This document shows, one piece after another, positions 2,605 through 63,330 of a stretch of DNA of 64,000 nt; the first letter of the stretch is position 1, and each line of letters begins with the position of its first letter. The notes under the pieces are model-generated. The model was not told the origin of the DNA. It worked only from the letters and a program-made list of their open reading frames with translations, and searched no databases. The translations under genes and the position numbers were made by a program. The stretch comes from Marsupella aquatica. Lineage: Eukaryota; Plantae; Marchantiophyta. The stretch lies in the NCBI GenBank assembly GCA_973895155.1, contig OZ316898.1:17784752-17848751 (forward strand). The letters run 5' to 3'.

Positions 2605-3658
2605 CTCACATTGCTAAAAACAAAAAACCTTCAAAAATATGCTGGTACGTACAATACAGTTCAGCCCCAGTACAGTACAGACCATTACAGTACAGTACGA
2701 AGACGAACGACCAAGATGTGGAATTGCGGGATTGCGGGAACGAACGAAAGAATGAATGAATACCAACAGAGGCGGCGTCAGCTACTTCAACGGCTCTGCC
2801 ACTCCATCTCCTTTTGCGGCGGATGATTCCGTTCCCCTCTTCAATCCTCGGAATGGTTATTTGGAGGGGAGGGCTTTCGCACTTCCGGAGTGAATGCAAT
2901 TGTCGAAGAAAATTGGGAAGAAATCGATTGGATCCGTTTCCTCGCTTCCAGACCACTTCGTCTTCGACAGGATATACAGAATGAGTACCAATCGACTGTC
3001 GGACATTTGAGTGGAGGATTGGAATCCGTCGTCTCTTCCATTCGCTTCCATTCGCTTCCATTCGTCCCTTCAATATCATTTCGTGTCTGATAGGATTCAC
3101 AGAATGAGTACCCATCGATAGCGCGGGGAAATTCCTGAGGGCATTCATGGACTGTTGGAAAATTGAGCGGAGGATTGGAATCCGTCGTTTCTTCGGTTCA
3201 ATTTCGTTCGGTCTTCGATAGGCAAGATGAATGCCAATTTATCGCGTGGGGGATTTTCTGAGGGCGATCTGCTGTTGTTGGAACTCATGGCGAACCTATT
3301 CTGAGCATGGACGAGAGGATAGGAACCGAGTAGTCAGTCTGTGGGAGACAGTGAGACTTACTACTACTAAAGCAGACAGAAATTCGCTTCGCTGGAGAAG
3401 AATGGAGAGCATGGTACGAGAGGATTAGAGAATGAGGAGCATTGGTTCGGATGAAGGACATCGTTGAGATCGCTCCCGCTCCTTCCTTAGCTCCGGGCTC
3501 TCGGGAGGCTAACTGTCCAATCTCCAATCGATTTACTTTCGATCTCGCGATTTTGTCCGAATCTTGTTCTTTCCCGATTTGGGTTTTTAAGGAATTGGCG
3601 CAATAGGAAAGGAAACGAGAGAACTGGAGAGGAGAGTAGAGGAGAGGAAAGGAAAGGC

Positions 3659-6600
3659 ATGAGTGGTTGGGGCAGGAAGCGGGCAGCAGGAAATGGGATC
3701 ATGCAGCAGCAATCCCAGGTGCGGCAAGGGTCATCGTTCTGGACATGTCCTGGATGCAACACTGCTGTGCACACCGCTCTGATGGCATTCCACATCTCTT
3801 CTTGCCCAGTGGTAGCCGCCGACGAGGTTGCTGCTCCCGTAAAAAAGGCGGCGAAACCTCTCTTTCCTGATCGTCGAGAGCGAATTGATGAAGGAAAACA
3901 ACGAGAGGACCAGGGAACCGGACAGAGTACTCCCCTGGGGAGTCCAGAATTCACAGGTGCGAGGAAGCGGAATGTGTCGGTGAGGGAGGAGGACGAGGAG
4001 GATGAATTGTCAATTATGCCCCGAGGTAGTACTCGACCTATGAACGGCCCTGAAGAGGTCTGGGATGAGAAGGAGGAGGATGTGCTCCAAGAAGAGCAGC
4101 CGCTGACTGGTAGAGCGCCTTCTTCTTCCCATCTTGCCGTTGACGTTGGCATTAAGGGCGACAAATTCTTATCAAGTCCACACCCTGAAACGCCGATTCA
4201 GGAGGGAAGAGAAAGGATTGGGCTTGATGTGCAAATGACGGTTTTGCCTGCTTCACCACCAACAGAGGTGAGGAAGAGGCTGTTTGAGGACTGGGGCGAC
4301 CAGTTAAGTCCAGAATCACCCGAGTGCGTTGTGCAGCATTCTCCTTCCCCCAGTGAGGATGCTGCTGCTGCTGACTCTCCATCCTTGGTAAATCCACAGG
4401 CCAAGAGGCCTAGAGTAGCAGAATTTAATAGGGATGAGAGCCGGGTGGTGGTTGATTTGGGGTTGAGGGATTCGGGCAGTACAGGCGGGGATATGGCAGA
4501 AGGGGAAACTCTTCCTTACCTCGGTAGCGTCCACGACTCTCAGGAGGAACAGCATGAGGAAGCGGTTTCACTAGACCTTACTGAGAAAAGTCCACAGGAG
4601 CTCGAGAAGATACTAGAAGCCGATCAGAAGCTGCAGGCTCGTAATTTTTGCTCGCTTCAAAGAGCAGCTGAAATTCAGGGTGGCAACAGAATCGGCGATG
4701 GTTTTTCCCAGAGAGAATTACGATTGGAGAATGTCATTCGAGAGTTGAAAGAACAATGCTCTGGGGCGTTGCTCAGGGAGACTAAGTTACAAGAAACTTT
4801 GGATCTCAAGAATGAGGAATGCGAGAGATTGCAAAGACGTGAGCAGGAATTGCAGAGCGAGATGCTGTCCCTGAGGGGACAGCTCGAGAACACTTTGCAA
4901 GAGTTGAGAGACATAGTCGACAGGGGAGAGCAGAAATCAGCCAACGAGATTCGTAGGCCTGAACAATCAGCCACACAGGTATACAAGGGAGATGAGTCAA
5001 TGGCAACGCAACTCCTGTCACAAACCTCAAACACTCCTGCTTCTTGCAGCAACAGTCCCAGATTAACAAAGGACGACTTTGTCATCACTAGAGTAAGTTC
5101 TGTAAGCTCTCAGAATCTCATGAAGGCACACAATCAAGTAGATATTGCCAATGAGGAGCAAGCTACCCAAGTGCTCTCAGATGGCTTGGACGAAGGTGGT
5201 GAGAATTCTCAGGCCTCCGCAGAATTTAGAAGGGTCAGTGGTTCACGTACCCGTCCATCTGACGTAGAACCCGGAGAGCCTTTTGTCTCATTAAGGGCTC
5301 CACAGAGCAAGGTTGACGAGTTTCTCGCCCAGACATTATATGAAGGAGGGACAGAAACCAACAAGAAAATTTTGAACGACGAGTTTTCGAGCCCTCTGCC
5401 ATGTTCCATGAATGCAGCGGCTCTGCTTGCTCCCCACACTCCAGGCAAGGCTCTTTTGAAGCCTGCTGGCCAGCATGAAGAGAGAGATACATTTGGAGGT
5501 CAAGACAGTTGCAATTTGCATACTATGGGCAACCAACGAACAGAAGTAACTCCGGGGGCAGGACCCAAGACACCTGAAAATTTTGCTGTCATGCTGGGGG
5601 GACACGAGAAGGGTTTAATCAGTGACTTGCTCGATAGCTTCCCTCCTGCACAGGGAATAGAAACTCATGTCGGTATTGATCCATTCGATGACCATTTTCA
5701 AGAGACTGTGAATGAAAGCGCTTCAGAACCAATGCAGGAGGATGGACAGAAATGTAGGAGTGATGGAGTTGACGACAAAATTAGACTTCACCATGAATGG
5801 CTTGATGAGTGCCAGCCTCCTGCATCGCCCCAGGCTTCTCAAAATAGTCAACAAGAAATCACAGATGAGATTGCGTCGAAAAAGAAGAGACGGAGGCCTG
5901 CTTTGGTGATCGATTCAGACAGCGACAAAGACACAGATTGTCCCGATCCGATCGTTGAGATCCTGAGGACGGACAGGCAGCTCTTATCATGCTCCTCTGT
6001 GAATGTCATTTCGTCAAGTGGCGAAGAGGAGGATATCGGTGAAGGCTCTGGAGGAAGTGGTAAGAAGGGGAAGCGAAGGAGGCTCATCAAAGTCCAGGAA
6101 TCACCAGACAGGACCAAAACCTTTCCACCAGATCCCGACTCTGAGGGGACAAAGGACACCGGCGCAGGGGAGTTAAGAAGAAGTAAAAGGTTAAGAAATG
6201 TGGGACGGAGGGGAGGCTTGGGTACAAATGGACAGGGATCGCTTGCCAAGCCTCATGTCCTCGATGATGATGACGAGGTTGTAGAGATAGGTTCTGATTC
6301 GTCTGATGGCGACCTAACTGGATCAGTTCACAAGCCTAGGAAAGATATAGCTAACCAAAAGCATAGATATTCTGGAGCTCAGAGGGCTCTTTTTGTTAGT
6401 AAACAGGATGTTGAGGATGAGGAAATCGATGAGATTGAAAGTGACGATAGTGGTTTCATTAACGACGATCAGGAGTCGGATGCTGACGGAGTTGATGAGA
6501 TTTCTGATTCTGGTGAAGAGAGTGAGACTGATGGTTCTTCACGTAGCAGAAGCTCATCAGAGGGACGCAAAAAGTACAATTGGGACCTTGAAGGTGATAT

Positions 6601-7098
6601 GCTGGCGGCCCTGGGAAAAGATACAGAGCTATGCTTGAGAGGTTTGTGCGCTATATATCGTCGACAAGAAGAAGACGAGAAATATTCGGCGTCATCAAAA
6701 TATAGAAACAAGCGTGGCTTTAGTACATTCCACTCAGCAAGGTACACTGACTATCCTTTGATCAAATTTCCCACCATGCTAAGCAAGCTCTCTGCCCATT
6801 GTCCTACTTAGTTTGTGTTTGTAGAGGAAAATCTCAGGATTTGTGAAGGATGGTAGGAATTACTCACCTGACATTGTAATCTGAATGCAGGGCTTCAGTG
6901 ATTGCAAGCTTCCTAATGGGAGATACAAACGTTGGACCAGTGGTGAAAACTGTGAAGGAGCTCAAGGAGGGATTCGGTGAGGTTGCCGTGACATACTGCT
7001 CGGACATGTGCAATCACTACTCAAAGCAGCTTTTTGAAATCTATCTGAACAACGAAGATCCTTACTTCCCTGAACCTTATACCGGCCCAATAGTGTAG
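3659..7098 (+). CDS. Large low-complexity/coiled-coil protein with conserved plant-specific C-terminal domain; exons 3659-6741 and 6891-7098
   Basis: 1050-codon ORF. The GT-AG intron 6742-6890 joins it in frame to the 6898-7098 ORF. The C-terminus WDLEGDMLAALGKDTELCLRGLCAIYRRQ...NKRGFS...YSKQLFEIYLNNEDPYF resembles an uncharacterised conserved plant domain (recognised by eye). N-terminal CxxC...H...C motif, central coiled coil, basic NLS-like patches. Confidence 0.85.
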
Positions 7099-8442: not shown

Positions 8443-8817
8443 GAACTTAAAGTCGGGATAGACACAAACATTTGAAGGGACAACCCAGATGGACACAGCC
8501 TGTTGACACTGTAACACCAATGAGAATGACACTCAAAATGGATTACAGGTGTCTTATGAATGGAAGCTAACCAAGATTTAGACATTACGTTAAGTACATT
8601 TAACTTCCTCCGTTGCTCCTGCGTGGACAGACTACGGGAAGAAACAACCAAAAACTTCCTGCTCCCGGTCAGACAGCTCCTTACAGGTCACCATTGGAGC
8701 ACAAGTGAAAAGCATGTTATACATGCACAATCTTAGGTTTGTTATGTGTCCATCCAGGTCATGTTTGTCCATTGGGGTTTGTTCTCAAACTTTTGTTACT
8801 ACTTTGGCTATAAGTTC
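8443..8817. mobile_element. Mutator-type MITE (375 bp) related to the 48453 MULE
   Basis: Ends GAACTTAAAG... and ...CTATAAGTTC, flanked by the direct repeat ATATATGGTG (8433-8442 and 8818-8827). Internal GATGGACAC/GTGTCCATC motifs as in the large MULE TIR. Confidence 0.8.
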
Positions 8818-20417: not shown

Positions 20418-22480
20418 GCTTTCTCCTTTTTACTGATTGCATGCGTGCCTGTTGAATGTCAAACTCGGATGGACCTATGGCTTTCTCCTTTTTACTGATT
20501 GCATGCGTGCCTATTGAATGTCAAACTCGGATGGACCCTTAAGTTTTTCCCTTTTGCTGATTGCATGAGTGCTTCTGAATATGAAACTCGGATGGACCCA
20601 TGAGTTCCTCCTTTTTACTGATGGCATGAGTGCGTACTAAATATCAAACTCGGATGGACCCGTGGCTTTCTCCTTTCTACTGATTGCATGAGTGTCTACT
20701 GCATATGAAACTTGGATGGACCCATGAGTTTGGTCTGAAGCCTTCTCCTTTTTAGAGCATCCGCACCGGTGCTCGGCATTGGGCTACGGGCCGGCATTTA
20801 CTCCCATATACAGGCCTGAGGTGTTTTTTTGGGTTGCACCGGTGGTAGGCGTCGGCATATTTTTTCCAGGCTACTGTGCTTTGAGTTTTCCAGATTGGAA
20901 TATGTCGGGTATTTCCAAGTCTGGATTCTGCTTTTGCCAGTGCTGCCAAAGCACATCGACGGGCGTCCTCGCGCCACATGTTCACATCTCCTGCCTCATG
21001 CTATCGTTTTTCCACTTCGCAGTGTCGACAGCCAGCGCTCCCGCATGCTGAAGTTGGTTCGAACTTGGGATGCAGGGGTTTGAACTCACCGGGTGCGGCT
21101 TTTCAAGGGTGTTTTACCAAGGACCGGTGCAACGCGATTTTTTCAGCCGGACAGTATTGCGATGCAGGCCATATCAAGCATGCCAAAAAACTTCCTTTGG
21201 CAGTGCCGGGCCGCGAAATCTGTGCGGATGCTCTTACTGATTTCATGAGTGACTATTGAATATCAAACTTGAATGGACCCATGGCTTTCTCCTTTTTACT
21301 GATTGCATGAGTGACTACTGAATATCAAACTCGCATGGACCCATGGGTTTCTCCTTTTCACTGATTGCATGAGTGCCTATTGAATATGAAACTCGGATGG
21401 ACCATGACTTTGGTCTGAATCCTTCTCCTTTTTACTGATTGTATGAGTGACTATTGAATAGCAAACTCGGATGGACCCATGGCTTTCTCCTTTTTACTGA
21501 TTGCATGAGTGCCTACTGAAATATCAAACTCGGATGGACCCATGGCTTTTTCCTTTTTACTGATTGCATGAGTGCCTATTGAATATGAAACTAGGATGGA
21601 CCCATGAGTTTGGTCTGAAGCCTTCTCCATTTACTGATTGCATGCGTGAATATTGAATATGAAACTTGGATGGACCCATGGCTTTCTCCGTTTTACTGAT
21701 TGCATGAGTGCCTACTGAATATCAAACTCACATGGACCCATGGCTTTTTCCTTTTTACTGATTGCATGAGTGCCTACTGCATACCAAACTCGGATGGACC
21801 CATGAGTTTGGTCTGAAGCTCCCATGACTTCCAAAGCTAGGATGCATCAGAACATGAAAACATGCTCTTTAGGGTTTTGATTGACATAGGATCTGTAAAC
21901 ACACTTCTGACCCTTTGGTGTTGAATTCCAATGGTTTATGCTGCGTGCATGCGTGACTATTGAATATGAAGCTTGGATGGACCCATAGGTTTGCTCTGAA
22001 GCCCCCATGGACTTCTAAAGCTAGGATGGACTGCATCGGAACATCAAACAATGCTTGGATAGTTCTCTTTGATTGAAATATGACTTGTAAACACTTTCCT
22101 AACTGTTTGCCATTGATTTCCATGGATTTATGCCAAGCTAAGTCGCTGGTCATTTGACTACTTTTTACTCATTGTATGAGTCACTATTGAATATGAAACT
22201 CGGATGGACCCATGGGTTTGCTTTGAAGCCCCATGGACTTCCAAAGCTAGGATGGACTGCATCGGAACATCAAACAATTCTCCAATAATTCTTTTTGATT
22301 GAAATATGACTTGTAGACACGCTCCTTGCCATTTGCAGTTGATTTCCATGGGTTTATGCCGAGCTAAGCTGTTGTTCATTTGACTACTTTTACTGATTGC
22401 ATAAGTGACTATTGAATATGAAACTTGGATGGACTGATGAGTTTGCTCTAAAGGCCCCATGGATTTGAAAAGCTAGGATG
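20418..22480. repeat. Satellite, ~62-bp unit (CTTTCTCCTTTTTACTGATTGCATGAGTGCCTATTGAATATCAAACTCGGATGGACCCATGG), merging into longer units to the right
   Basis: About 5 copies at 20418-20754 and about 10 at 21234-21810, plus ~240-bp units up to ~22480; interrupted by a MITE. Confidence 0.9.
20755..21233. mobile_element. PIF/Harbinger (Tourist) MITE inserted in the satellite
   Basis: 12-bp perfect TIR GAGCATCCGCAC / GTGCGGATGCTC and TTA TSD (20752-20754, 21234-21236). The satellite unit resumes exactly across the insertion. Confidence 0.9.
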
Positions 22481-31091: not shown

Positions 31092-31530
31092 GAAAATAAT
31101 GTTCCCATGGACCACAACATTGGTCTTTTGAAACCCCCATGGACCACATTTCCCAAAATTTGAGTTTAATTGTAATAATTTGTTGTTCATAAATTCAAAT
31201 ATATTTTTTAGTTTTGAGCATGTGCTAGAGTAGTAGGTGAGCTACACTTCTATCAAAGTGAAAGGAATTTTTGTCCATTTTGCTTGAGCTATTCAAAATG
31301 GAATGCAGAGGGGTAAGTTCTATTAAATTTATTTTCATTATTTTAATATGAGATATTAGGACTTACTTTTTTTTATGTCTCCTCCTCCTATAGTTGCCTT
31401 GCCGATGAAAAACTAAATTATCTTAAGACCCATAATCATCAAGATATAAGCCCGAAACCTCCATGGACCGCCCAAATGTGGTCCATGGGAGCATGCTGTC
31501 CAACATGAGGTCCATCCGGGCTTTCATTTC
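31092..31530. mobile_element. Mutator-type MITE (439 bp)
   Basis: Perfect 9-bp TSD TGTTGCTAT (31083-31091, 31531-31539). The right end reverse-complemented (GAAATGAAAGCCCGGATGGAC) resembles the large MULE TIR GAACTTAAAGCCCCGATGGAC. Confidence 0.8.
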
Positions 31531-47080: not shown

Positions 47081-49342
47081 TCTGTTAAGACCTCACCAAC
47101 GCTGCATCCCTCCTCCCCTCCCTCTCTATTTCCTGTGCCGGCTCTCAGCCGCCACAACTCCAAATCACTTCACTCCTCGCCTCCCCGATGTGTGCCGAAT
47201 TCTAACCACAAACCTCTCCAACTTTGCCAAGTCAACAACAAGAACAGCAACCCAAATTCCGCACAAGCAACGCTTTGCTCCGGTACAAGATGACTCACGA
47301 CGCTAATTCTTCGGGCAGGCAGGCAAGCAGGTTCCGTCTCGAACCACCACAGGGGGAAATTGTGACGGTTCCGGAAGAACTCCAAAGCTTATTACGGAGT
47401 ATTCTATTCCCGGTGTCGGTTGTGTGGAGGTGGTGGGGCACGGCAAGCGGGAAAGGCGACAGACGTTGTTGATGGGAAAGGCAGGCAGGCAGGCAGGCGG
47501 ACTCGAACTGCCGAATGTAGCTGAAGGAGAAACCTTCTGGGCTTTTGGTGTGTACTCGTCGTGAGTGTGCGCTTCTTCCTCCCTCCCTCCCTCCCTCCCC
47601 TGCCTCGCTTCGATCCTAGCTTTGATTGATTGCTGCCGCCATTGCAACGTACTGTTGCACTAAAGATCTCTCTCTAGCCTGCCTGCTGCTGCGCTGATCT
47701 CTAGCATTACAACTTACTATTGCACAATCATGGTGATTCGGTCGGGACGTGGAATGGATGGAGCTGTTGTGTCTTTCCGTCTGTTCTCCACTTGGAATGC
47801 AACCCAACGTTCTTTCTCGTGTTCGTTGGTCTTCTTCGATGCCTCACTGCCTTCGTTGGACGGGTGTCTCTGTACTACTGTGAGGTGTAATTAGGCTCGC
47901 ACAAAGTATAATTAATTAAAGATTCGCTGCCCATTAAGCGACCTTCCTGAAATGGTGGGTCTAGAAAATTAATTAAAAATTGGGAGCTCTTTTTGAAGAT
48001 GTACTCTTACCTTGTTTCCTGCTATTCCCATGGACTGTCATAATGAACAAATCATTTTACACGTGATGAGATGACAGCCTATCGCAAATGGATGGTAAAA
48101 TTGTCTCATTAATTCTTTACCGACATTTCTACTTTTCTGTTACCCTAAGAACATTATGTGTTCACTCAAAGTTAAATTGAGAATGTACATGCACTGGAAT
48201 GAAAATGCACATTAAAAATATTCTATAGCTATACAGTGGCAAAGTAATCGAAGCACTCCTTGGAACAACGACACTGTCGTATGAAAAAACATGATTTCCA
48301 TTAGCTCCAATCCAAAAATTACTTGAAGCGTGCTTCTTGTAACAAAAGTAGAATGCATCAACAATACTCCAAAAAACAAATATCAAGTAACCTTTATAGC
48401 AGTAAATTAGTCAAAATATTATTTATAACAATAACAATGGTCTCTGAAAAATGAACTTAAAGCCCCGATGGACACGGAGCTTTGCATATACGACCCGGAT
48501 GGACACACTGGATTTACAGTGTCACGACTACCTTCATTGACACCCAAAACGTATTACCGGTCTCTCATTAACGGAACTTAATCTGGGACCGGAGGACTTA
48601 ACGTTGCCTTAGTGTGTGCATTGTTTTTCCGTCCTTCCTCCAACCCACGAGTTGTCCACACTGTTCAAGGTCGAGCTGCTTCTGCCACGAGAAGCAAAAG
48701 CCAGAGCTTTGCCCCTTGGCATCGCAGAGGAAGCACAAGCCCTCGTTGAGATTGAATGTAGGATGCGCTGCGACACAGAGACTAGCTGCACTGCGCTACG
48801 ATTTGGGGGGCTAGTTCCGTTGCGCTTTGATTCAGGCTATCGGCGGCTGTGATTCACGCTATCGGGGGCTGGTTGCGCTGCAAAACATGATTGAGGCGTT
48901 GCAAAGCTGCGCTGCGATTCAGGGGCTGTGATTGAGGGGCTACGCTTTGTTGCGAATCACTATGAAACATGATTGAGTTTGGCTGGCTGCGCTGCGCTGC
49001 GATTGAGGCTATCAAACTGCACTGCACTACAAAAACCGGGGGGCATGCTGCGCTGCGATTGAGGCTATCAAACTGCACTGCACTACAAAAACCGGGGGGG
49101 CATGCTGCGCTGCGAAAGGAGGGATGCCTAGCTGGAAGTGGTGAGGTGGAGAATTGGGGCGCAGCAGGGAGGTTATATTGGAACAACTTCGACAATTCAT
49201 TGATTGCTCATGCCCGACTCTTGGGTGAAGCAATTTTTGACATCAGGTGGAGACTTAAACTTTATAGATGTTTCCTTTGTTGTTGAAAACAGTGATGCTA
49301 TTCGTTGGCAACAAAGATGTGAAATGTACTTACATACATTGA

Positions 49343-52341
49343 ATGCAAAATCATAACCAGGATGTTCAAATTCCCAAGATTGTAACTACTGTGAATAATG
49401 CACAGGAGTTAAACGGGGGCACATACACCATGGACCCTGAAGATATCTCTGGTTCTGGATCTTGGCCAGATTCACACGAACATGACCTACAATGTCAATC
49501 CTATCACACCACTAATTCTGGATCTTCTAGTGACAACACTGAAGAAGAATCACAGCCCGCATTTGATGACAATAACTATCCTGAATGGACCTGCGCTTCT
49601 GAAGGCCATACAAAATTGAGGCAGAACCCTGAGAAATATCCACATATTGATATCAGTGAGCTTGTCCAAGATGACTTTCACTCGGTCTTAGATCCAGCGG
49701 AATCAGGTACAGGCTATGTACCCCCAACTCATTCATTTGTCAACATTTATTCATTTCTGGTTCAGTTCCCTTGTTTAACTATGATTGGCAATTGCCATGC
49801 AGAATTTGTGAGCAATCATCAACCATCTGAGTTGGAACTGAAATTGCTCAAAGGGCAACAGTATGTGTCTTGGAATGAATTTAATAGAGCATTAGATGAA
49901 TATGAGGCCAAAGCAGGATGGAGTTTCACCAGATTAGCTAGGAATAAAACCAGATTCATGGGTAAGTGTAGAGGGTTTGACGTGAATGATTTGAACTCCT
50001 GCAAAGCTGAACTTTATGTCAGGCACATGAAAAAAAGTGGTAGAGTTTGCATACAGAAAAGGTACCTTATCCACACCTGTTCACAATTGTCACACAAGTG
50101 GAGACATGGTGCTCATAAGAGACGATGGGTAGAGGAAAAGGTACAGTCAAGCATCCGTGTTAACCCTAACACGTCCAATAAAGACTTGAGAGGGCACATT
50201 AGTGATATCCATTCTGTAGATACGACTGTGTGGACTGCACAACGAGCACGGCGGAAAGTTATCCGAAAGCTAGGTGGTGATCATGGCACTTCCTTCCAGA
50301 TGATTCCAGCATATGTGGCTAAAGTGAAACATACCGACCCTGGATCACACGTACTGTATGAAACATATGAAACTGACAATCGATTCCGCAGAATTTTCAT
50401 GGCACCAGCATCTTCACAAAATGCATTCATCCATGTTTGACCTTTTGTTGGGATGGATGCTACACACACATGTAACACCAGTGAGAGGGTTTCATACATT
50501 TCATACCATATCATTGAATTGATTTCTATTTGACTATCACTGCAAGCACCTACTACATCACTAATATCTCTCTCTTGCAATAGGAGGCGAATTTCCCATG
50601 ATTATATTACTGGCTACAACCTTTGATTGTAACAATCCCATTTTGCTATTAGCATGGGCTGTTGTTGGGGTCGAGAACAAGGAAAATTGGATTTTGGTTC
50701 ATGGCTCATCTTGATCGAGCCTATCCTAGAATGAGGATGGAGAGAGAGATTGTCATTGTCTCAGACTGTGATAAAGGCTTGATCCCAGCAGTTCAAACCA
50801 TCTGGGGTGACATTCATCACTCTTTTTGCACACGACATATTAGGGCAAATGTAATAACCAACTCAGACAAAGCACTTGGTGACTGGTTTCTTAAGGTATG
50901 TCATTCCATTTATTAATTTTATGCAATTTGACCTTTTGCCCACCATACATTCACTTGTTATGACTCGATTTAGTACTTACTTCACTCATATGTCTTTTGA
51001 CTGGTCAGTTGGCCCGTGAGGTTTGCAAATCCGAGTTTGATCGCATGTTGGATGAGTACCAGCCACTGAATGACCATCAGGAAGCTGGGATCAGATATAT
51101 TCGAGCCATTGACCCAAAGCTATACTCACGTCATGCCTTTCCAGTACCAAGGTCAAACACCAACACGACCTTGACTTTTGTTTAAACCGTATCATATTCT
51201 TTGTTTCAGGATTTTGATTATTGTACATGTTGGTATGTAGGTGGGGTCATACTACCTCAAACGTAGTGGAGATTTTGAATGGAGTAATGAAACCTATTCA
51301 CAAATTGCCTGCATTACTAATATGCAAGGAACTGTGGGACTACACAATGACCAAGCATTATAGCAGAGCAATTGAGGCAGCAAGTAAGAATCAATTTGAT
51401 CTTTTGAATACTTACATTTTTTTCTTGCATGAACGCCTACCTTTGTGGCAGTAAGTATTAATTTGTACATATTGCATGTATTGTAGCTTGGCCTGCAGGT
51501 GATAATAGCTTGACTCAACATGCAACATGGATGTTGAATACATTGTACACAAAAGCCGGGGGGTTGATGAGCGTCCATCATCAGCCACAACTGCTTTGAT
51601 GTGTGATGCCCAAGGACAATGGGCCCTGGATGTTGAGTCAAGACAATGTGAATGCAAAGATTGGGTTGAGATGGGGTTTCCGTGTGTTCATGTAGTGAAA
51701 TTTTGTCGCAATCGAGGATTGGATGAGAAATTATACATTGACAACATTTGGAAAGCCAAATCGCAGGTTAGTAGGTCAGATTTATCCAAGGTCAGATTTA
51801 TCCAAGGTCATATTGATCCATTCCATTGACGTGGATACTTGGCCTGCAGGTACTGGCTTACACTGTCAGTCTTCCCCCAATTTCATTAGATGGTTTACAA
51901 CAAGATGCGAAGTCTCTCCAGCCTCTTATTGTTGCATCTAAGAAGAAGGCATCTGTGTCAATGAAGCGAATGAAATCAAGGTAATTCATGTTCTACATGA
52001 AGCTATATAATTCATTCCATTCTCAAAATTCAGGCTATGCTAATTATGAAATGTTTGTATATAGGTTTGAGGGTGTCATTGCCTCTGAGCGCATTGCAGC
52101 CAAGCAACACCAAAAGTGTGGTATTTGTGGAAAACTAGGCCATAAGCGTCGAGGATGTGTTGTCCCAAACCAAAGAGCACAGGTCCGCATGAACAGGTCT
52201 GCTGATTTTTTGAGGGTTTGCTCCATTCACACAATGGAGAGGGACAAGATTGAGGCTGAATGGATGATTTGGGATACCCGACCTGCACCCAAAATCTCTT
52301 TTTCTCAATGGTATGAGAAGACTCAGCAAAGTAGGGTATAG
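49343..52341 (+). pseudogene. MuDR/MURA-like transposase (multi-exon, inactivated)
   Basis: N-terminal Mutator DNA-binding-like region (LLKGQQYVSWNEF...C...C...HTC). DDE motifs PFVGMDATH, VIVSDCDKGL, CTRH, TTSNVVEILN; SWIM CECKDWVEMGFPCVH; knuckle CGICGKLGHKRRGC. In-frame TGA at 50438-50440 and a +1 frameshift near 50690. Confidence 0.9.
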
Positions 52342-52539
52342 GAAGTGATTTTTTACATGAGTTGATCAGGCATAGCATTCACAAGACATTGAGTGAATTA
52401 CTATGAAGCTGTCACTACTAGTGCTACATTAACATGATTGACTATAATTATGGGCTACTATAATTTATGGGCTTCAGTTTACATATCCTGAACCAAGTTG
52501 TATTGAGAACGCAACTCTTCCAAATACTCTATGGATCGC

Positions 52540-53442
52540 CTAACTTCTGCTTCCTTTGCTGCGTAGATGACTCAGGTATGCTGAGCGTACATTTTGGTGA
52601 GTGCAGTCATAATATGTATCACTAGGTGGAGATTGAACATCTCCAATGTCCAAGCGATGCAAAGAATGATCCAAATCATCTACTCCATCATCACTCTCAC
52701 GCTCCAAATCAGGGGATGTCACTGGAATTGGCCTCATGATATTGTGTGAGTCTGGACTCCCATACTCCTCGCATGAAGAAGCGGCAACACACTCCCCAAC
52801 ATACCGGATTTGATGCTCAAGGGAGTAAGTGGGTGTTGGGTGAGATTCATAACCCGTAGTGATAATGTGTCCTGGCAAGGGTGTGGCATGAAATGAACAT
52901 ACATTTGTTAGGGTCATGCCAACAATATACCAAGCTGAATCATCTGATTGCTCCACAGGACGCTGAAATATTATCTCAAAAATGAAGTATGTGCCAAGGA
53001 GGTTCTGCATGCGTGATCGAAGAAGGTCACGCTGCTCCAAAAAAGGTTGTATAGAGAACTCAATAGCATCATATGAAGAGGGTCCAACCCTCAGGATGTC
53101 ACTGCCAACATCCCACACTGCACACTCCACGGTCTGCACATCGTCTATAAGGACCACCCAAAACCGCCAGAACCAAGTTGTCGTGTTTCGGTTGTCACAT
53201 GGACCATCGTGAGTTGAGGGGTACTGTCCACCATGTAGGTCCAAAGAGCATGATGGAGCCGTAGATCTTTTGCACAATTTACTTGAGTTACGGATCTTTT
53301 GTCCACAACCCAAATAGGTGAAACACCCTAGCACAGGGAGGATGTGAGTCAATCGAGTTCAAATGTGTGCTTGAATCTGTGCACCATACGACAAGTCTTG
53401 GCCACGAGCGAGTATGGAATCCAGTGTGTGGACACCAGTCAT
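52540..53442 (-). pseudogene. RPA1 C-terminal (Zn-ribbon OB-fold)-like cargo gene with one in-frame TGA (53361-53359)
   Basis: The ATG at 53442 is in frame with the 52540-53352 ORF across a single TGA. FTYLGC..CKRS..C..WRFWVVLIDDVQTVECAVWDVGSDIL follows the RPA70 DBD-C pattern YxAC..CxKK..C..RY.L...D.TG...T.F...AE.LL. Confidence 0.55.
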
Positions 53443-53711
53443 GCGAGTGCGATTATGACAAGATTTTTGCATCCAACAGTGCATCATGTACAAAACCAAC
53501 CATGCTCAGTGGGTGCCTTATGGGCTCATTATGTCCATGAACATGCAGCTTGAAGTTGAATATGAGTGCATAACAAGGGCAGTTACAATGGGCCGTTCAG
53601 AGCAGACTTGGATTAAAATATCCGTGCTGGAAATGATCATGTAATATAATTATAAGACAATGTATCGATTCTTAATTACAAGAATGAATCTCAAAGTGAA
53701 CTACAACCTGT

Positions 53712-54212
53712 CTACAAAGCAGGGCCAAAATTGTGACTCCATCCATCATTGGTAATGCACAAAATTTCTTCAATGACATGCTGGTCCTGTCTGAGGTACC
53801 CAACCCCTAATTCCAACATCACATCTAAACTCCATCCTGCAAGCCACCATTTAGGATGGGGACCAGGTCCTGATAGTACAGGTCCCAACGCCCTCCAATA
53901 ATCTGAGTCAACCACATGTCTCCACCCTGTATTAATGCATCTAAGAGACATTATGTTGTGAGCCTCGCAGGGAACTAACAGTCTTGGCCAAATATGGGTG
54001 AGGACTAAATCATTTGGCAGAGGAGGAAGGAGGTGGGTATGCTGAGTATACCCAATCCCCTCCGCTTCACCCTGCCCCTCTGCTGCACCAGACTGAAGGG
54101 CAGAATCCATAGTAGGGCAGTTTAGAGGCCCTTGAAGGAACCTAAAGAAGGCAATGATCAGTGACATTGCACAATGCATCATGTCTACTAGAGCCCAACA
54201 AACCCAGGCCAT
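53712..54212 (-). CDS. F-box-only cargo protein (start 54212 or 54110)
   Basis: LLPPLPNDLVLTHIWPRL...MSLRCINTGWRHVV is a plant-type F-box signature. Only ~60 aa follow, with no Kelch or LRR repeats. The ORF is uninterrupted. Confidence 0.7.
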   Translation of the reverse strand: MAWVCWALVDMMHCAMSLIIAFFRFLQGPLNCPTMDSALQSGAAEGQGEAEGIGYTQHTHLLPPLPNDLVLTHIWPRLLVPCEAHNIMSLRCINTGWRHVVDSDYWRALGPVLSGPGPHPKWWLAGWSLDVMLELGVGYLRQDQHVIEEILCITNDGWSHNFGPAL

Positions 54213-54213
54213 G

Positions 54214-55035
54214 TCAAGCTACGTATTTAGCAGTCGAGAGGCCAAGCCTATTGCCTGCATACACCCCGCAAATAGAGTATGCATCAGGCTTATATAATAG
54301 AGTATCATTAAACCCTAAACCTCGAAGGCGATCCTCGGGGGTCTCACTATATGGGGACCTCCCCATCGCCTACGACGTTTTTAGGCCTCGGACCCCCTAA
54401 AATGTAAGAATTTTTTTTAATTTTTTAACCCCTATAAAGTTGGAATATTCTTGGAATATTTTAAAAATTGGATTAAAAAGACCCTAATGTTCTTATAAGT
54501 CTCAAAATTGAATTTAAAAGACCCCCGAGAGACGATCCCTTAGACCAAAAACACCCTCAATGTTGGTGAAATTATTAGACCACACACAAATGACATGTTG
54601 ACCTTGAGGGAACTTTTACTCTTTGGGAAATCCAGACTTCAGAGGTTTGGTATGACAGGTGGAAACCTTGGCAACAGTCGCCAGAGAACCCTTCACAATA
54701 GCTGCAGCAATTTCTACCCAGTGGGTGTCTACAACATGGCTGTCAACAAAAATCATCCATTTTCCAGACATTACATTATTGGCAATAGCTAGACTTTCAA
54801 TATGAGAGTTCTGGAGCCTATTGTGGGATGTCAGACACAATGATTCCCAAGCCAAGGCCAACCCTTTTGTATTGACAAGGCAATCCAATTCCTTGTTTGA
54901 GTGAAGGGTGCTAACAGTTAGCCATTCAATGTACTTGTAGGGAATGGATGATGGCTTCCATTCGTCAAGGAATTCAGAAATGGATTGAAGATCACTATCA
55001 AAGCATACTACATGAGACGACTGCCCAACATCCAT
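54214..55035 (-). pseudogene. C11orf68/Bles03/DUF1917 (eIF4E-like fold) cargo gene, disrupted by one TAA and a MITE
   Basis: FLDEWKPS..WLTV..LAIANNVMSGKWMIF..VDTHW..IAAAI..G..VAKVS continues in frame after TAA (54618-54616) as HVICVWSNNFTN, and after the MITE as DRLRGLG..LLYKPDAYSICGVYAGN. These are the hallmark DUF1917 motifs in order. Confidence 0.85.
54334..54529. mobile_element. 196-bp MITE inserted in the DUF1917 gene
   Basis: Perfect 11-bp TIR CTCGGGGGTCT / AGACCCCCGAG and 8-bp TSD AGGCGATC / AGACGATC (7/8). Confidence 0.85.
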
Positions 55036-57951
55036 GACTATGAGCAATGGAATGAATTGACCCCTGCAAGCACATACCTGAGAATTAATACTATTGAAGA
55101 CTTAATTTGCAATCGACACTTACTACTGTAGTAAACAAATTGCAGAGGACCAATAACTGTTCGCAGACACTTACTTGATCAAAGAATGTTGAACCAAGTC
55201 TGAAGGCGCACAATCGGTATGTTTCAAAAGGCAGATGTCACCTGAACCACCTTAACAAGAATCCATTTATTTAAGTAAGCATACAGCTACACTCAAAAGC
55301 CTACAAAGTACAAAGCTTAGGGACAAGACAAGGTAGAAGCAATTTAATTGGAGGTTTGGCTTACGTGATCGAACGTAGCCAGTTTGCGAATTGGCTGTGG
55401 CTTCAAGGGCCGCTATCCCTCGGGTGAAGCGAAGTGATACAGTTGTTCAGGAAACTAATTGTGATAGCAAACACCTGGCTGCGCAATGTACTTAGGTGCG
55501 AACTTGAGTTGGAGGCGATCAGCTCATGAAATTCAGCTGCGAACTAGAGGGTGGTTGCAAAAATGAGGTGCGAACTCCGAGCTGAACTACCGCCATGAAC
55601 CGGCTGAAGTGCTCAACTCATTCTAGCAGCATCAAGCTGCTGAACGACTGCATCGAAGAGCTGTTGAACTCCCTCCCGGCTGAACTGAATCTGCGATTCA
55701 GGGGCTGCTACCGGCCATGAGTTGCTGCAAAATAGAGCTGTGATTGACATCTGCAGGCCAAATCTGAACTGCAGCTAGGGGCGATTCGCTGCTGAACTCT
55801 GGGCGAAACTGAAGCTGCAAACATGAGCTGCTGCGAAAAAGAGCTGCGACCTTGAGTAGCAACCTTGACCCGTAAGATTGAGCTGCTTCGGACTTCAGCT
55901 GAGATTAGTTGAGTCGCTCAGATGCGACGTTCAGCTGCGAACACCTGCAGCAAAGTTCAGCTGCGAAGGGGGCGGCTTGATCAGCTCCCAAAGTTAGCAT
56001 CTGTCTTGCAATTTCAAGCAAACAGACCACAAGGACAAGCAAACTGAATCGATTCAAATCATCTTCGACATTGGCAAGCAATCATAGCACGAAGGGTGCC
56101 GAATGCAGAAAATGGAAGAACCCTAGTAGAGATGTTCTGTAGCTTACCGCGCTTAATGTCAATGTCGCCCTATGCCCGTTGTTGCAGGAAGGAAAACGAA
56201 TGTCTTGGACAGACTACCGGGAGTACCGACGGAAAACCTCCTGGTCCCGGTCACAACACTCATTACAGGTCACTTTTTCCATAGTGTGCTATACAAGCAA
56301 AATTCCGAGTTTACGTTGTGTCCATGCAGGTTGTGTCTGTCCATCCTGGCGTTTATGCAAAGGTCTGTGTCCATCGGGGCTTTAAGTTCCTGAAAAATAG
56401 TATTCATCAGAAATGATTATGCAAATTAATATTTCATTTAGCCCCGCAATGGAAAATTACTACAATCCCATTAACAAGAACAATGCTCCTTAAAAAACAA
56501 GATTCATAACAACATTGCTGGAAGTTGTATAGTCAGTCCACAAAGTTTCAATGCCCTAGAATCTCAACAAAATGTGTAAAAATTTGTAATCCATTTATAA
56601 AAATTGAGCTTATTTGGGCTTTAGATTTGCCCCCTAGCCTACCGGTGGGAATTGTTTCTTTTGCAGGGCTTATAAATATAAAAATATATACTTGAGGAAA
56701 TTAAGTTCATTTGGTTTTTTCCCATTGAGCCAAATTACTTGAGATAGTATATATGAGTAAAATGTGAAAGCACTCATTTTTTACTCAAAGTCTCATAAAC
56801 CGTGAAGGCTGGATAAAGTATTTACATAAAAATCTAAATTATTTTATCTTTTTTATTAAGCACTTAAAAAAATGGTTAGAGTAACTATATGGAGGGGAAA
56901 GAGTATTGGGAGAATCGAGCCTTCAAGCCAAGCTCCCAATTAAAGTGCTCTGGTGTCACTGACAAAGTATCTTTATGACAAAAGTGGTGACAAAGTTAGT
57001 GAAAAGAAAATCTTTGGACACAAGTGATGGTTTGGCATTGACAGTGTACTTTATAGATAGAAAAATAAATAGTAGTATCCATACATATTTTTATGTTTTA
57101 GTCTAGCCCATCCAAGTTTCATTTATCACGGACAACCTCTTGGTCCATCCAAGCTTTAAGTTCACCCTTTCAACTGAGTTTTCAAAATGGTTGGTAACCA
57201 AGTTATGCTTGCCATTTGGGAAATTTTTTTAAAGTGGAAATCTAGAGAGATATACTTAGTGGACCTCCAAATGCAACTTTCTCTCTTAATGGACCAAAAG
57301 TTTCCCACGCCCTCCCAATGGACCCCAAAGTTTAGATTCTCTCCCAATGGACCTCCGGGCCCACTCCGTACAGGCATGTTCTTATGAAACAGCTTACCAC
57401 GCAGTTCGAGTCCACTGCGTACCCTGTGGAAACCATGGTTGGTCATGTGTAGTCGGCCGTCAATAACGTCGCAGTCCACAAGCGTCGTAGCCCTGGCGGC
57501 AATCGAGCTCCGCTCAGCACCATGGCAGTTTTTGTGAATACAGTATGACTATTGTATTCAAAACAATAATTGAACGAGTTTGCGGTGGCATTGGAGCCTT
57601 CGTGCCCGGCCTCACAGGATTTCAAAATACATTGTCACTTTAGTGTTCAAGATACAAAGGAAATAGTTTATTGGAGCTTGCAACAGCCGGCAAGCCGTAC
57701 CTCCCCGAACCTCCCCGAACCTCCTTGCTTTTATGAAGACATTGTCCATAATGTGTACAAATCTTAAAGGAATAATTTTCAAAATTCAAATGTGCCCGCC
57801 CTTTATGGAACCCTTTCGGAACCTGTTTTGTTGTCATTTGGTTTGTTTCTCGACATTTTCTCGCATTTTCTCGTGTTGTTGGTTCCGGCTCGTGTTGCTG
57901 GTTCTTATTGTTCCTGCTGTACCCGCTCGTGTTCTTGCTCGTGTTCCTGCT

Positions 57952-58512
57952 ATGTCGACCCTTGAGGATGTGCGAATTGCAATGAAGGAGCGGCCAGACA
58001 GCATCATTGGGCCAATCCCGGTATATGTTTGTAATTTTCACTCTGATTTCCCATGGCCCAGAAAGTTCACTTACAGAGGTTGCAGGCATGGCATTGGCGG
58101 TGGTTTGGTTTGTGGGAAGTCCATTGAGGCAGCGGAGCAATGCAAGCACGACCCACTGGTAGACGGTAACAATTGTCATTTGTATAGGTTCGATATTTGC
58201 ATGGTGGATGCATATGAGAACACTGGGCCATTCAAGGCCACTATCTTTCAAGCTGCACGAGAGCTTGTGGACATGACTGCTGATGAATTTGCAGAGTATG
58301 GTACCATTCGCCAACTTGAAACAATGCACCAGCAAATTTCTCAGATCCCATACTGTCTAGTGTGGATTAAGGCAGGACGACACTCTGCTGTTGTGAATAA
58401 GCTTGTTGTTGAGATGTGGCGATGCCCTCCTAGTCGTGCCCCTGTGAGAACAAGAGTTGAGAAAGTGATCAGCAGAAGCAATCTTGTGGATGCTGATGTC
58501 CTTATGCAGTAG
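57952..58512 (+). CDS. RPA1 C-terminal (Zn-ribbon OB-fold)-like protein, 186 aa, intronless
   Basis: FTYRGC..CGKSI..C..LYRFDICMVD..TGPFKATIFQAARELVDMTADEF fits the RPA70 DBD-C pattern. The ORF is intact from ATG 57952. Confidence 0.65.
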   Translation: MSTLEDVRIAMKERPDSIIGPIPVYVCNFHSDFPWPRKFTYRGCRHGIGGGLVCGKSIEAAEQCKHDPLVDGNNCHLYRFDICMVDAYENTGPFKATIFQAARELVDMTADEFAEYGTIRQLETMHQQISQIPYCLVWIKAGRHSAVVNKLVVEMWRCPPSRAPVRTRVEKVISRSNLVDADVLMQ

Positions 58513-62309: not shown

Positions 62310-62499
62310 GGTACAATTAGCAATATCTGAGGGATAGTCTAGGGTACCTAGCCCTGTTTTGTCACCAATGTGTTCATGATAATAAATATGAAATGTTCCT
62401 GCATTTCTTGCTCTCTTTGAAGACTATATAACATGATCTGTTCCAAAAATGGTCATAGTAGATCTATGGCTGGGATACAATATGTATGTTGTATTCACA

Positions 62500-63330
62500 T
62501 TTTCTCTGACTTTACGACGAAGACGCCCCACTGTCAAATCCTTCCCACTGACTAAGGCGCCCAAATGGACAAAAACTACGAAATTTGAACACAGAAAACC
62601 CTTTTTCATGTATACGATCTGGACGATGTATTCAGATTTCACACTTGGAAAAAAAATGTCCCTCCGACTTTACGAACACGCCCTCCGCCGAAGCCTGCCC
62701 AAATGGACAAAACCTATGGAGTCTCAACATAGAGATACATATTTCATGTACACACTTTGGACATTGTATTCAGATTTCACACTTGGAAGCAAAAAATTGT
62801 CCCTCCGACTTTACGAACACGCCCTCCGCCGATGCCTGCCCAAATGGACAAAACCTATGGAGTCTCAATATAGAAATACATGTATACACTTTGGACATTG
62901 TATTCATATCACACTTGGAAATAAAAATTGTCCCTCCGACTTTCCGAACACGGCCTCCGCCGAAGCCTGCCCAAATGGACAAAACCTATGGAGTCTCAAC
63001 ATAGAAATACATTTTTCATGTATACACTTTGGACATTGTATTCATATCACACTTGGAAATAAAAATTGTCCCTCCGACTTTCCGAACACGGCCTCCGCCG
63101 AAGCCTGCCCAAATGGACAAAACCTATGGAGTCTCAACATAGAAATACATTTTTCATGTATACACTTTGGACATTGTATTCAGATTTCACACTTGGAAAA
63201 AAAATTGTCCCTAGCCCTCCGACTTTACGAACACGGCCTCCGCCAAAGCCTGCCCAAATGGACAAAACCTATGGAGTTTCAACATAGAAATACCTTTTTC
63301 ATGTATACACTTTTCACGTTGTATTCATAA
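62500..63330. repeat. Tandem array, ~131-145-bp unit x6, between the convergent genes of MULE-2
   Basis: AAATGGACAAAA at 62563, 62701, 62842, 62973, 63111 and 63256. Confidence 0.9.

What the first reader, a model, noticed from the sequence alone, without database searches (positions are those of the whole stretch)
48453..56389. Mutator element carrying a three-gene accessory cassette (eIF4E-fold + F-box-only + RPA1-like OB fold) convergent with its transposase
Seen: one TIR- and TSD-bounded MULE holds a MuDR transposase (+) and three co-oriented, closely packed reading frames (-) at 55035-54214, 54212-53712 and 53442-52540, with no apparent introns in the coding regions. Known: maize MuDR has convergent mudrA/mudrB, Arabidopsis VANDAL MULEs carry VANC anti-silencing genes, and many MULEs carry Ulp1 proteases; Pack-MULE captures are usually fragments. 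Inference: these look like whole genes forming an element-encoded module of an RNA/cap-binding-like fold, an SCF adaptor or decoy and an ssDNA-binding fold. That could be a counter-defence or transposition-assisting system. I know of no described MULE with this combination.
Basis: partly seen in the sequence, partly recalled or inferred. Interest (0 to 1): 0.9.

Follow-up and report, generated by a model that had tools for sequence, protein, structure and literature searches.

The report
Mutator transposon with Bles03 partner gene
This is a real but mutation-killed copy of a multi-copy Mutator-type jumping gene; its transposase is paired with a conserved, previously undescribed Bles03/DUF1917-type helper gene, and two further reading frames (F-box-like, RPA-like) are later, less certain additions.

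Summary
The element is real. It has 40-nt inverted ends (37/40), a perfect 9-bp target duplication and a MULE+SWIM transposase. The three minus-strand frames are longer than chance gives.

This copy is dead:
- The transposase has two frameshifts.
- The Bles03-like gene has a TAA stop and a 196-bp MITE inside it.
- The RPA-like frame has a TGA that reads CGA in other copies.
- Only the F-box-like frame is open.

The Bles03 assignment is solid (Pfam 1.4e-12; PDB 1ZTP 8.5e-7). The F-box and RPA1 assignments could not be confirmed: there were no Pfam or PDB hits, the structure models failed, and only language-model leads remain.

The cargo is not private to this copy. Diverged contigs in four runs of two coded organisms cover all three frames. 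The scan also noted a second three-gene copy 12 Mb away (s1-768022).

A sister family found in metagenome contigs is 5.5 kb long, with copies 99.9-100% identical. It carries only a transposase and a convergent Bles03-like gene. Both genes have diverged about equally from the window's, at about 55-59% amino-acid identity with saturated synonymous sites. A third lineage has Bles03-like followed by an F-box-like homologue.

So the conserved core is two genes, not three. No close host parent was found. Function is untested. I rate it a new variant of the known "MULE plus accessory gene" design.

The parts
48444..48452 (.). left target-site duplication CTGAAAAAT
   Evidence: It is identical to 56390-56398.
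48453..48492 (+). left terminal inverted repeat (begins GAACTTAAAGCCCCGATGGAC)
   Evidence: 40 nt, 93% complementary to the right end. The same motif starts the inverted ends of the sister family.
49343..52341 (+). transposase gene, in several exons and decayed. It has an acidic N-terminus and conserved N-terminal region (49343-50440), a MULE DDE domain (about 50583-50916), a SWIM finger (51527-51829) and a last exon with a CCHC-like motif (51988-52341).
   Evidence: Pfam hits to MULE and SWIM. The exons are 54-89% identical in amino acids to the L001 transposase exons (alignment A2 is 59%).
50662..50692 (+). +1 frameshift in the MULE domain of this copy
   Evidence: The two stretches of the window that match L001 (50583-50690 and 50662-50889) lie in different frames, whereas their L001 counterparts share one frame. 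Most other copies lack one base at 50692 (table 4).
51509..51566 (+). -1 frameshift in the SWIM exon of this copy
   Evidence: The window changes frame between 51465-51566 and 51509-51772 where L001 stays in one frame. Other copies carry an extra G behind 51557 (table 4).
52334..54114 (.). 1781-bp block holding the RPA-like frame and all but the first 33 codons of the listed F-box-like frame. It is absent from a variant of the family and is flanked by the 7-bp direct repeat AGTAGGG.
   Evidence: A joint 52333->54115 is seen in one contig of each of four runs (table 5).
52540..53442 (-). RPA-DBD-C-like reading frame, broken in this copy by a TGA at 53359-53361
   Evidence: The frame is a 272-codon open run. 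Nine contigs of three runs read G for A at 53361, which makes the codon CGA (table 3). The Atlas feature search gives Rep_fac-A_C clusters at 0.89 with 174-182 shared features. There were no Pfam or PDB hits.
53712..54212 (-). F-box-like reading frame, open in this copy. Its likely real start is the ATG at 54110.
   Evidence: It is homologous to L008 1246-1560, which lies just downstream of that element's Bles03-like gene (BLASTP 3e-10). Other copies have 3-nt insertions at 53903 and 53907. There were no Pfam or PDB hits.
54214..55035 (-). Bles03/DUF1917-like accessory gene. It would be 205 codons without the MITE and is broken in this copy.
   Evidence: Pfam PF08939 at 48.5 bits against a cutoff of 23.1. 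PDB 1ZTP at 8.5e-7. It is 54% identical to the intact 205-aa P0001.
54616..54618 (-). premature TAA in the Bles03-like gene
   Evidence: It aligns with a glutamate in P0001 (FPKEEKIPQGQHVICVW).
54334..54529 (.). nested 196-bp MITE with 11-nt inverted ends CTCGGGGGTCT and an 8-bp duplication at 54326-54333 and 54530-54537
   Evidence: Summed contig depth is about 1e5 over 54250-54649, against hundreds elsewhere. Other copies skip exactly 204 bp here. The ends are shown.
56350..56389 (-). right terminal inverted repeat
56390..56398 (.). right target-site duplication CTGAAAAAT

Best explanation
The stretch 48453-56389 is a decayed copy of a multi-copy, once autonomous Mutator-like element.

The conserved core of its clade is two convergent genes. 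One is a DDE transposase with MULE, SWIM and CCHC-like parts. The other is a short (205-aa) Bles03/DUF1917-family protein. This pair was already together before at least three families diverged, and both genes have been kept under purifying selection. The Bles03-like protein is therefore the element's own accessory protein, in the position that mudrB holds in maize MuDR.

In the window's family two more reading frames sit between the pair. One is an F-box-like frame, shared with one other lineage. The other is an RPA-DBD-C-like frame, seen only in this family so far. I read these as lineage-specific accessory genes.

Shown here:
- the anatomy of the element;
- the multi-copy state of the family;
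- the Bles03 homology;
- co-divergence of the Bles03-like gene with the transposase;
- conservation of the F-box-like frame;
- the death of this copy.

Inferred about mechanism:
- The Bles03-like protein helps the element propagate. It could be a partner of the transposase, or it could act on host RNA or protein silencing machinery through its eIF4E/phosphothreonine-lyase-like fold.
- The F-box-like protein would hand a host factor to SCF ubiquitin ligase.
- The OB-fold protein would bind single-stranded DNA at excision or repair intermediates.
For: Element:
- Inverted ends and a 9-bp duplication.
- MULE and SWIM domains.

Family-wide cargo:
- 1481-3274 contigs per run lie on 50450-56420, at identities from under 90% to above 99%.
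- These include diverged pieces on the RPA-like frame (53088-53335), the F-box-like frame (53749-54036) and the Bles03-like frame (54741-55038), in runs of organisms A and B (tables 1 and 8).

Bles03:
- Pfam E 1.4e-12 and PDB 1ZTP E 8.5e-7.
- The best of 94 hits, P0001 (54% identical), lies in complete 5,482-bp MULEs. These have related inverted ends and hold only a transposase convergent with the Bles03-like gene.
- Those copies are 99.9-100% identical and have six different left flanks. One internal-deletion derivative was also found.

Selection:
- pS is 0.78-0.82 (saturated). pN is 0.32 for Bles03-like and 0.27-0.30 for the transposase.

Phylogeny:
- The transposon-borne Bles03 proteins group together (SH-aLRT 88).
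- All 13 named relatives checked come from fungi, cnidarians, a rotifer and protists. The two more distant hits whose contigs were long enough to show neighbours sit among ordinary host genes.

F-box-like frame:
- A homologue lies directly after the Bles03-like gene in L008.

RPA-like frame:
- Other copies have CGA where this one has TGA.
- The Atlas lead points to Rep_fac-A_C.
Against: - No RNA run was found, so expression is unknown.
- The F-box and RPA labels failed every formal test: Pfam, PDB, and AlphaFold models with pLDDT 37-40.
- The RPA-like frame has no homologue outside this family.
- F-box-like dN/dS is only about 0.5, measured between two dead copies.
- The recently active sister family does without both extra frames, so they are dispensable for transposition in that clade.
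- The complex prediction for Bles03-like protein with transposase gave no verdict.
- I did not verify the host organism myself.
Confidence: 0.7

Rival explanations
1. Bles03-like, F-box-like and RPA-like genes form one co-adapted three-gene module, for counter-defence or for assisting transposition, which the element needs as a unit.
For: - The three frames are co-oriented and tightly packed.
- All three are covered by diverged contigs in two organisms.
- The scan noted a second copy with the same three-gene layout 12.07 Mb away (unverified).
- The Bles03-like to F-box-like order recurs in L008.
Against: - The sister family, whose copies are 99.9-100% identical, has only transposase plus Bles03-like.
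- A variant in the same genomes lacks the RPA-like frame and most of the F-box-like frame.
- The RPA-like frame has no homologue outside this family.
- There is no functional or expression evidence.
Confidence: 0.15
2. Pack-MULE-like capture. The minus-strand frames are pieces of host genes picked up by the element, replicated passively and without function for it.
For: - MULEs are known to acquire host gene fragments (PMC6446971).
- The extra 1.8 kb is absent from the sister family and from a variant in these genomes.
Against: - The element has its own transposase.
- The Bles03-like gene is complete (205 codons) and has co-diverged with the transposase under constraint.
- No host parent was found. 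The best non-transposon hits are 40% identical or less, and there were no hits at all for the other two frames.
- The F-box-like frame is conserved at protein level where the DNA no longer aligns.
Confidence: 0.08
3. The RPA-like and F-box-like block (52334-54114) is a separate mobile cassette that inserted into a two-gene MULE, not part of the MULE's own gene set.
For: - The block is bounded by a 7-bp direct repeat, AGTAGGG.
- It is absent from a variant in the same genomes.
- The scan noted an unclassified 1.87-kb mobile cassette encoding an RPA-like protein elsewhere in this genome, and RPA-like genes in other transposon superfamilies (unverified).
Against: - The block has no inverted ends, and a 7-bp repeat fits microhomology-mediated deletion equally well.
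- L008 has the F-box-like frame directly after the Bles03-like gene in a diverged lineage. This argues that at least that frame is old within the clade.
Confidence: 0.07

Closest known systems
Maize MuDR (mudrA transposase plus convergent mudrB accessory gene)
   Same: - It belongs to the Mutator superfamily, has a 9-bp duplication and is bounded by inverted ends.
- It has two convergent genes. The second is lineage-restricted, has no enzymatic annotation, and is needed for, or associated with, propagation.
- MURB binds the MURA N-terminus (PMC12973397; PMC6446971).
   Different: - The partner gene here belongs to the Bles03/DUF1917 family and is unrelated to MURB.
- The inverted ends are short (33-40 nt, against about 200 bp in MuDR).
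- Binding of the partner to the transposase is not shown here.
Arabidopsis VANDAL21/Hiun (vanA transposase, vanB, vanC anti-silencing protein)
   Same: It is a MULE with extra element-encoded genes, one of which (VANC) counteracts epigenetic silencing of its own family (PMC5735166, PMC10398659, PMC6446971).
   Different: - The cargo here has no sequence relation to VANB or VANC.
- No evidence of hypomethylation or sequence-specific binding was obtained.
- VANDALs lack long inverted ends.
Human BLES03 / C11orf68 (PDB 1ZTP), Pfam PF08939
   Same: It is the same protein family. The family has an eIF4E-like fold, and a phosphothreonine-lyase function has been predicted for it in silico only (PMC4159009).
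   Different: - The transposon-borne proteins are shorter (205 aa). They match only profile positions about 143-252 and form their own group in the tree.
- They are encoded inside a transposon, not as a host gene.
RPA70-like genes of plant Helitrons
   Same: A transposon-encoded OB-fold protein related to replication protein A (PMC7385966).
   Different: - This element is a cut-and-paste MULE, not a Helitron.
- The RPA relation rests only on a language-model lead and a shared motif pattern. Pfam PF08646 is not matched.
Pack-MULEs
   Same: A MULE carrying non-transposase sequence between its ends.
   Different: - This element has a transposase.
- The cargo is whole genes without a detectable host parent, conserved across families.

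Membership tests
Mutator-like element (MULE) superfamily | Terminal inverted repeats | tested here: met
   40 nt, 37/40 complementary
Mutator-like element (MULE) superfamily | Target-site duplication of 8-11 bp | tested here: met
   A perfect 9-bp CTGAAAAAT on both sides
Mutator-like element (MULE) superfamily | Transposase with a MULE DDE domain (PF10551), often with a SWIM finger | tested here: met
   PF10551 at 27.7 bits (cutoff 27.6) on a truncated piece; SWIM at 22 bits (cutoff 19.6). It is 59% identical to the L001 transposase, which carries MULE and SWIM hits.
Autonomous (functional) element | Uninterrupted transposase and accessory reading frames | tested here: not met
   There are two frameshifts in the transposase, a TAA and a MITE in the Bles03-like gene, and a TGA in the RPA-like frame.
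Bles03 / DUF1917 / UPF0696 (PF08939) | Pfam match above the gathering score | tested here: met
   48.5 bits against 23.1, E 1.4e-12. The intact relative P0001 scores 77.9 bits.
Bles03 / DUF1917 / UPF0696 (PF08939) | Sequence similarity to the solved BLES03 structure | tested here: met
   1ZTP at E 8.5e-7 over residues 59-129
Bles03 / DUF1917 / UPF0696 (PF08939) | eIF4E-like fold of this particular protein | not tested
The fold is inferred from family membership.
F-box (PF00646 / PF12937) | Profile match to an F-box model | tested here: not met
   No Pfam hit at E up to 5 for the window frame or its L008 homologue. There was no PDB hit. The Atlas gives F-box clusters only at 0.87-0.89 with 82-96 shared features.
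F-box (PF00646 / PF12937) | Three-helix F-box fold / Skp1 binding | tested here: inconclusive
   AlphaFold on the two-sequence alignment gave pLDDT 39.9. Skp1 binding is not testable here. The motif LPxxPxxxVLxxxWPRL...WR...W is conserved between the two homologues.
RPA70 DNA-binding domain C (Rep_fac-A_C, PF08646) | Profile match | tested here: not met
   No Pfam hit. No PDB hit with the single sequence or with the two-sequence profile.
RPA70 DNA-binding domain C (Rep_fac-A_C, PF08646) | OB fold with an embedded four-cysteine zinc ribbon | tested here: inconclusive
   Four cysteines follow FTYLGC, but not with the canonical C-x4-C...C-x2-C spacing (as I recall it). AlphaFold gave pLDDT 37.3 and Foldseek gave nothing. 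Atlas features give 0.89 and 174-182 shared features with Rep_fac-A_C clusters.
Pack-MULE | No transposase; cargo is fragments of identifiable host genes | tested here: not met
   A transposase is present. No host parent was found.
hAT-type MITE (the nested insertion) | Short inverted ends, 8-bp duplication, high copy number, no coding capacity | tested here: met
   11-nt inverted ends, an 8-bp duplication with one mismatch, 196 bp in length. Summed contig depth is about 1e5, and other copies skip 204 bp. The superfamily assignment rests on the duplication length alone.

The most novel reading that the evidence does not exclude
Bles03/DUF1917 proteins are a previously unrecognised class of Mutator accessory protein. 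On this reading, a short Bles03-like gene was acquired once and has since been co-inherited with the transposase in several families, including one that is apparently still active. It acts through its eIF4E/phosphothreonine-lyase-like fold, either on host silencing or signalling or on the element's own mRNA. One lineage has then stacked an SCF-adaptor-like gene and an ssDNA-binding-like gene onto it. That would give the orphan Bles03 family its first biological context.
Probability: 0.35. Interest if true: 0.7.

Novelty: new variant of a known kind. Interest (0 to 1): 0.5.

Why it matters
MULEs with a second gene are known: mudrB, vanB/vanC, mutB and Ulp1. In most cases the function of that second gene is obscure.

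Here the partner belongs to a widespread eukaryotic family, Bles03/C11orf68, that has a solved structure but no established function. It is kept under selection inside a transposon clade. One member of that clade looks recently active, because its copies at different sites are near-identical and it has a deletion derivative.

This offers a tractable handle on two questions. The first is what Bles03 proteins do. The second is how non-angiosperm MULEs secure their propagation.

The recurring RPA-like and F-box-like frames may be shared among several transposon superfamilies of this genome, according to other notes of the scan. If so, they hint at a common pool of transposon accessory genes.

Tried and rejected
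- **Word-index protein searches.** Searches with the F-box-like frame, with the RPA-like frame, and with the alignment of the two F-box-like homologues found nothing.
- **Metagenome scans.** Scans with the RPA-like protein and with the transposase alignment found nothing, not even the L001 contigs. That collection evidently lacks those samples.
- **Structure.** AlphaFold gave pLDDT 37.3 for the RPA-like frame (single sequence) and 39.9 for the F-box-like frame (two sequences).
- **PDB.** A profile search with the two RPA-like frames of the window found nothing. BLASTP between those two frames was not significant, although they share an FTYxGC...C...C...RF...D pattern.
- **Complex prediction.** P0001 was folded with two N-terminal transposase exons of the sister element. 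The result was no verdict (score 0.08, mark 0.34), which is evidence neither for nor against binding.
- **Window-wide scans.** Rfam found nothing. Pfam on the other long frames of the window found nothing.
- **Organism.** An exact look-up of the 1050-aa frame, meant to name the organism, found nothing on record. The organism stays coded. 'Liverwort-type' comes only from other agents' notes.
- **Helitron or inverted-end transposon as the origin of the 1781-bp block.** I rejected this: the block has no inverted ends and no TC...CTRR ends.
- **Literature.** Searches for DUF1917/Bles03 with transposons, and for MULEs with RPA or F-box genes, found no description.
- **Spliced model.** The transposase was searched exon by exon by reference. 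The exons were not joined.


Full report
**1. The element**

- The stretch 48453-56389 is bounded by 40-nt inverted repeats, 93% complementary.
- It is flanked by a perfect 9-bp direct repeat, CTGAAAAAT, at 48444-48452 and 56390-56398.
- On the plus strand, several reading-frame pieces in different frames match the MULE DDE domain and a SWIM zinc finger. The last piece has a CCHC-like motif.
- These features define a Mutator-like element, so the observation of a MULE is confirmed.
- The window holds four more ends with the same motif (GAA..AAAGC...GGATGGAC), at 8443, 21962, 31530 and 57163. Chance predicts 0.06 matches. The region is rich in related MULE remains.

**2. The three minus-strand frames**

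- In 52342-55200 the three longest open runs (272, 168 and 161 codons) all lie on the minus strand.
- In 2000 shuffles the longest run averaged 106 codons, reached 166 or more in 36 shuffles, and never reached 270.

Two of the three frames are broken in this copy.

*The Bles03-like gene (55035-54214):*
- It carries a TAA at 54616-54618, where the intact relative P0001 has glutamate.
- It contains a nested 196-bp MITE at 54334-54529, with 11-nt inverted ends CTCGGGGGTCT and an 8-bp duplication.
- Summed contig depth over the MITE is about 1e5, against hundreds elsewhere. Other copies of the MULE skip exactly 204 bp here.
- Without the MITE the gene is 205 codons, the same length as P0001. The text across the joint (GLRDRL|RGLGF) matches P0001 (ALRDKLRALGF).

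*The RPA-like frame:*
- It has a TGA at 53359-53361.
- Nine contigs of three runs read G for A at 53361, which makes the codon CGA. This is a CpG transition, in keeping with the element's CpG observed/expected ratio of 0.50.

*The transposase:*
- It is frameshifted near 50692 and near 51557.
- This shows both against other copies (table 4) and against the sister family, where the corresponding exons are in one frame.

Only the F-box-like frame is open. The copy is dead.

**3. What the frames are**

*First frame.* It is a member of the Bles03/DUF1917/UPF0696 family.
- Pfam gives 48.5 bits against a cutoff of 23.1.
- The solved human BLES03 structure, 1ZTP, matches at E 8.5e-7.
- The family has an eIF4E-like fold. 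One in-silico study predicts phosphothreonine-lyase activity (PMC4159009). No function is established.

*Second frame.*
- It has no Pfam or PDB hit, and its AlphaFold model is unusable.
- The Atlas feature search puts F-box clusters at 0.87-0.89 with few shared features.
- A conserved pattern, LPxxPxxxVLxxxWPRL...WR...W, fits an F-box but proves nothing.

*Third frame.*
- It also has no Pfam or PDB hit, and its AlphaFold model is unusable.
- Its ten best Atlas hits with a family are all Rep_fac-A_C, at 0.89 with 174-182 shared features. This is a fair lead.
- It shares an FTYxGC...C...C...RF...D pattern with a frame in the neighbouring MULE at 57733-58512. BLASTP between the two is not significant.

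I therefore use 'F-box-like' and 'RPA-like' as working names only.

**4. Is the cargo private to this copy?**

No.
- Four public runs from two coded organisms and two studies hold 50-68% of the element's words.
- When laid on 50450-56420, 1481-3274 contigs per run fit, spread from above 99% to under 90% identity.
- Diverged pieces lie on each cargo frame. Examples are 53088-53335 with 15 differences, 53749-54036 with 37, and 54741-55038 with 33 (tables 1 and 8).
- Other copies carry 3-nt insertions in the F-box-like frame, at 53903 and 53907. Several indels outside the frames are single bases (table 4). This is modest support for coding constraint.
- One variant, seen in all four runs, joins 52333 to 54115. 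It lacks the 1781 bp that hold the RPA-like frame and most of the F-box-like frame. The block is flanked by the 7-bp repeat AGTAGGG and has no inverted ends. I read this as a microhomology deletion, but an empty site cannot be excluded.
- The scan itself noted a second copy with the same three-gene layout 12.07 Mb upstream (s1-768022). I could not read it.

**5. Relatives elsewhere**

A full HMMER scan of 1.84 billion representative proteins with the intact N-terminal part of the Bles03-like gene gave 94 hits.

*The L001-type sister family.*
- The best hit, P0001 (205 aa, 54% identical), is encoded on 17 contigs of JGI metagenomes and one Logan run.
- Contigs L001 and L002 hold a complete 5,482-bp MULE with 33-nt inverted ends (97% complementary). 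These begin GAAACCAAAGCTCGGATGGAC, visibly related to the window's.
- This element contains only two genes: the Bles03-like gene and, convergent with it, a MULE/SWIM transposase. Its exons are 54-89% identical to the window's (59% over 215 aa).
- The copies are 99.9-100% identical and have six different left flanks. L012 is an internal-deletion derivative. This is the signature of a recently active family.

*Selection, window against L001.*

| Gene | pS | pN |
|---|---|---|
| Bles03-like | saturated (0.78-0.82 across the saturated comparisons) | 0.32 |
| Transposase | saturated (same range) | 0.27-0.30 |

Both genes are under purifying selection and have diverged to the same degree. This is what co-inheritance inside one element predicts.

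*The L008 lineage.*
- L008 is a 1.57-kb Logan contig whose Bles03-like product is 48% identical to the window's.
- Directly downstream of that gene, in the same orientation, is a frame homologous to the window's F-box-like frame (BLASTP 3e-10, 31% over 64 aa).
- The DNA no longer aligns there. The frame is therefore a real, old coding sequence in part of the clade.

*Tree and host relatives.*
- In a tree of the 94 hits, the window, P0001/P0002 and P0003 form one group (SH-aLRT 88).
- All 13 named relatives I looked up are from fungi, cnidarians, a rotifer, an oomycete and Plasmodiophora. None is a plant.
- The two more distant hits on longer contigs sit among ordinary host genes.
- There is thus no sign of a recent host parent.

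The F-box-like and RPA-like frames found no homologue by word-index search or metagenome scan.

**6. Reading**

- The conserved unit of this clade is transposase plus Bles03-like gene, arranged convergently like mudrA/mudrB.
- The F-box-like frame is older than the window's family but is absent from the L001-type family.
- The RPA-like frame is so far known only from the window's family.
The copy in the window is a corpse of it.
- What the proteins do is inference. The choices are a helper of the transposase, as MURB is for MURA (PMC12973397), or an anti-silencing factor, as VANC is for VANDAL (PMC5735166).
- My one test of binding gave no verdict.
- No RNA run holding the element was listed.

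**7. Novelty**

- MULEs with extra genes are well known: mudrB, mutB, vanB/vanC and PMD (PMC6446971). A recent survey of active plant MULEs reports a diverse array of accessory proteins (PMC12973397).
- I found no paper that links Bles03/DUF1917 to a transposon. I also found none describing a MULE with F-box-like or RPA-like genes. RPA-like genes are described for Helitrons (PMC7385966).
I did not test these notes.
- I rate the finding a new variant of a known kind and of moderate interest.

**8. Procedure notes**

- The transposase was handled exon by exon, by reference.

Noticed in passing
window 54334-54529: A 196-bp MITE with inverted ends CTCGGGGGTCT and an 8-bp duplication. Summed contig depth is about 1e5 in all four runs, so it is one of the most abundant repeats of these genomes.
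   Followed up: partly
window 8443-8463, 21962-21982, 31510-31530, 57143-57163: Four more MULE-type ends share the motif GAA..AAAGC...GGATGGAC (6 matches against 0.06 expected). I saw no matching target duplications, so these are probably remains of related elements. The end at 57163 is a right end only 774 bp beyond this element.
   Followed up: partly
window 3659-6811 (+): An uninterrupted 1050-codon reading frame with no Pfam family and no exact record in the gene-position collection.
   Followed up: partly
L001 195-5676; L002 136-5617; L003-L007: A two-gene MULE (transposase plus Bles03-like gene) in JGI metagenome contigs and one Logan run. Copies are 99.9-100% identical with six different left flanks, which suggests a recently active family in an unnamed organism.
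   Followed up: partly
L012 1-976: An internal-deletion derivative of the L001-type element. It joins position 1234, inside the Bles03-like gene, to position 4978.
   Followed up: yes
window 57733-58512 (+): The neighbouring element carries a 259-codon frame with the same FTYxGC...C...C...RF...D pattern as the RPA-like frame. BLASTP shows no significant similarity, and there are no Pfam or PDB hits.
   Followed up: partly
window 62449-63330 (+): A 293-codon frame that runs through an internal tandem array. Units of about 40 codons repeat ('...LRLYEHALRR.LPKWTKPMESQ...').
   Followed up: no
proteins P0010, P0012, P0068, P0004, P0005: In other eukaryotes, Bles03 domains occur in tandem. They also occur fused to an endonuclease/exonuclease/phosphatase domain, to an RRM, or to a calpain protease with a GRF zinc finger. 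In P0012 the Bles03 region also gives a weak IF4E Pfam hit.
   Followed up: no
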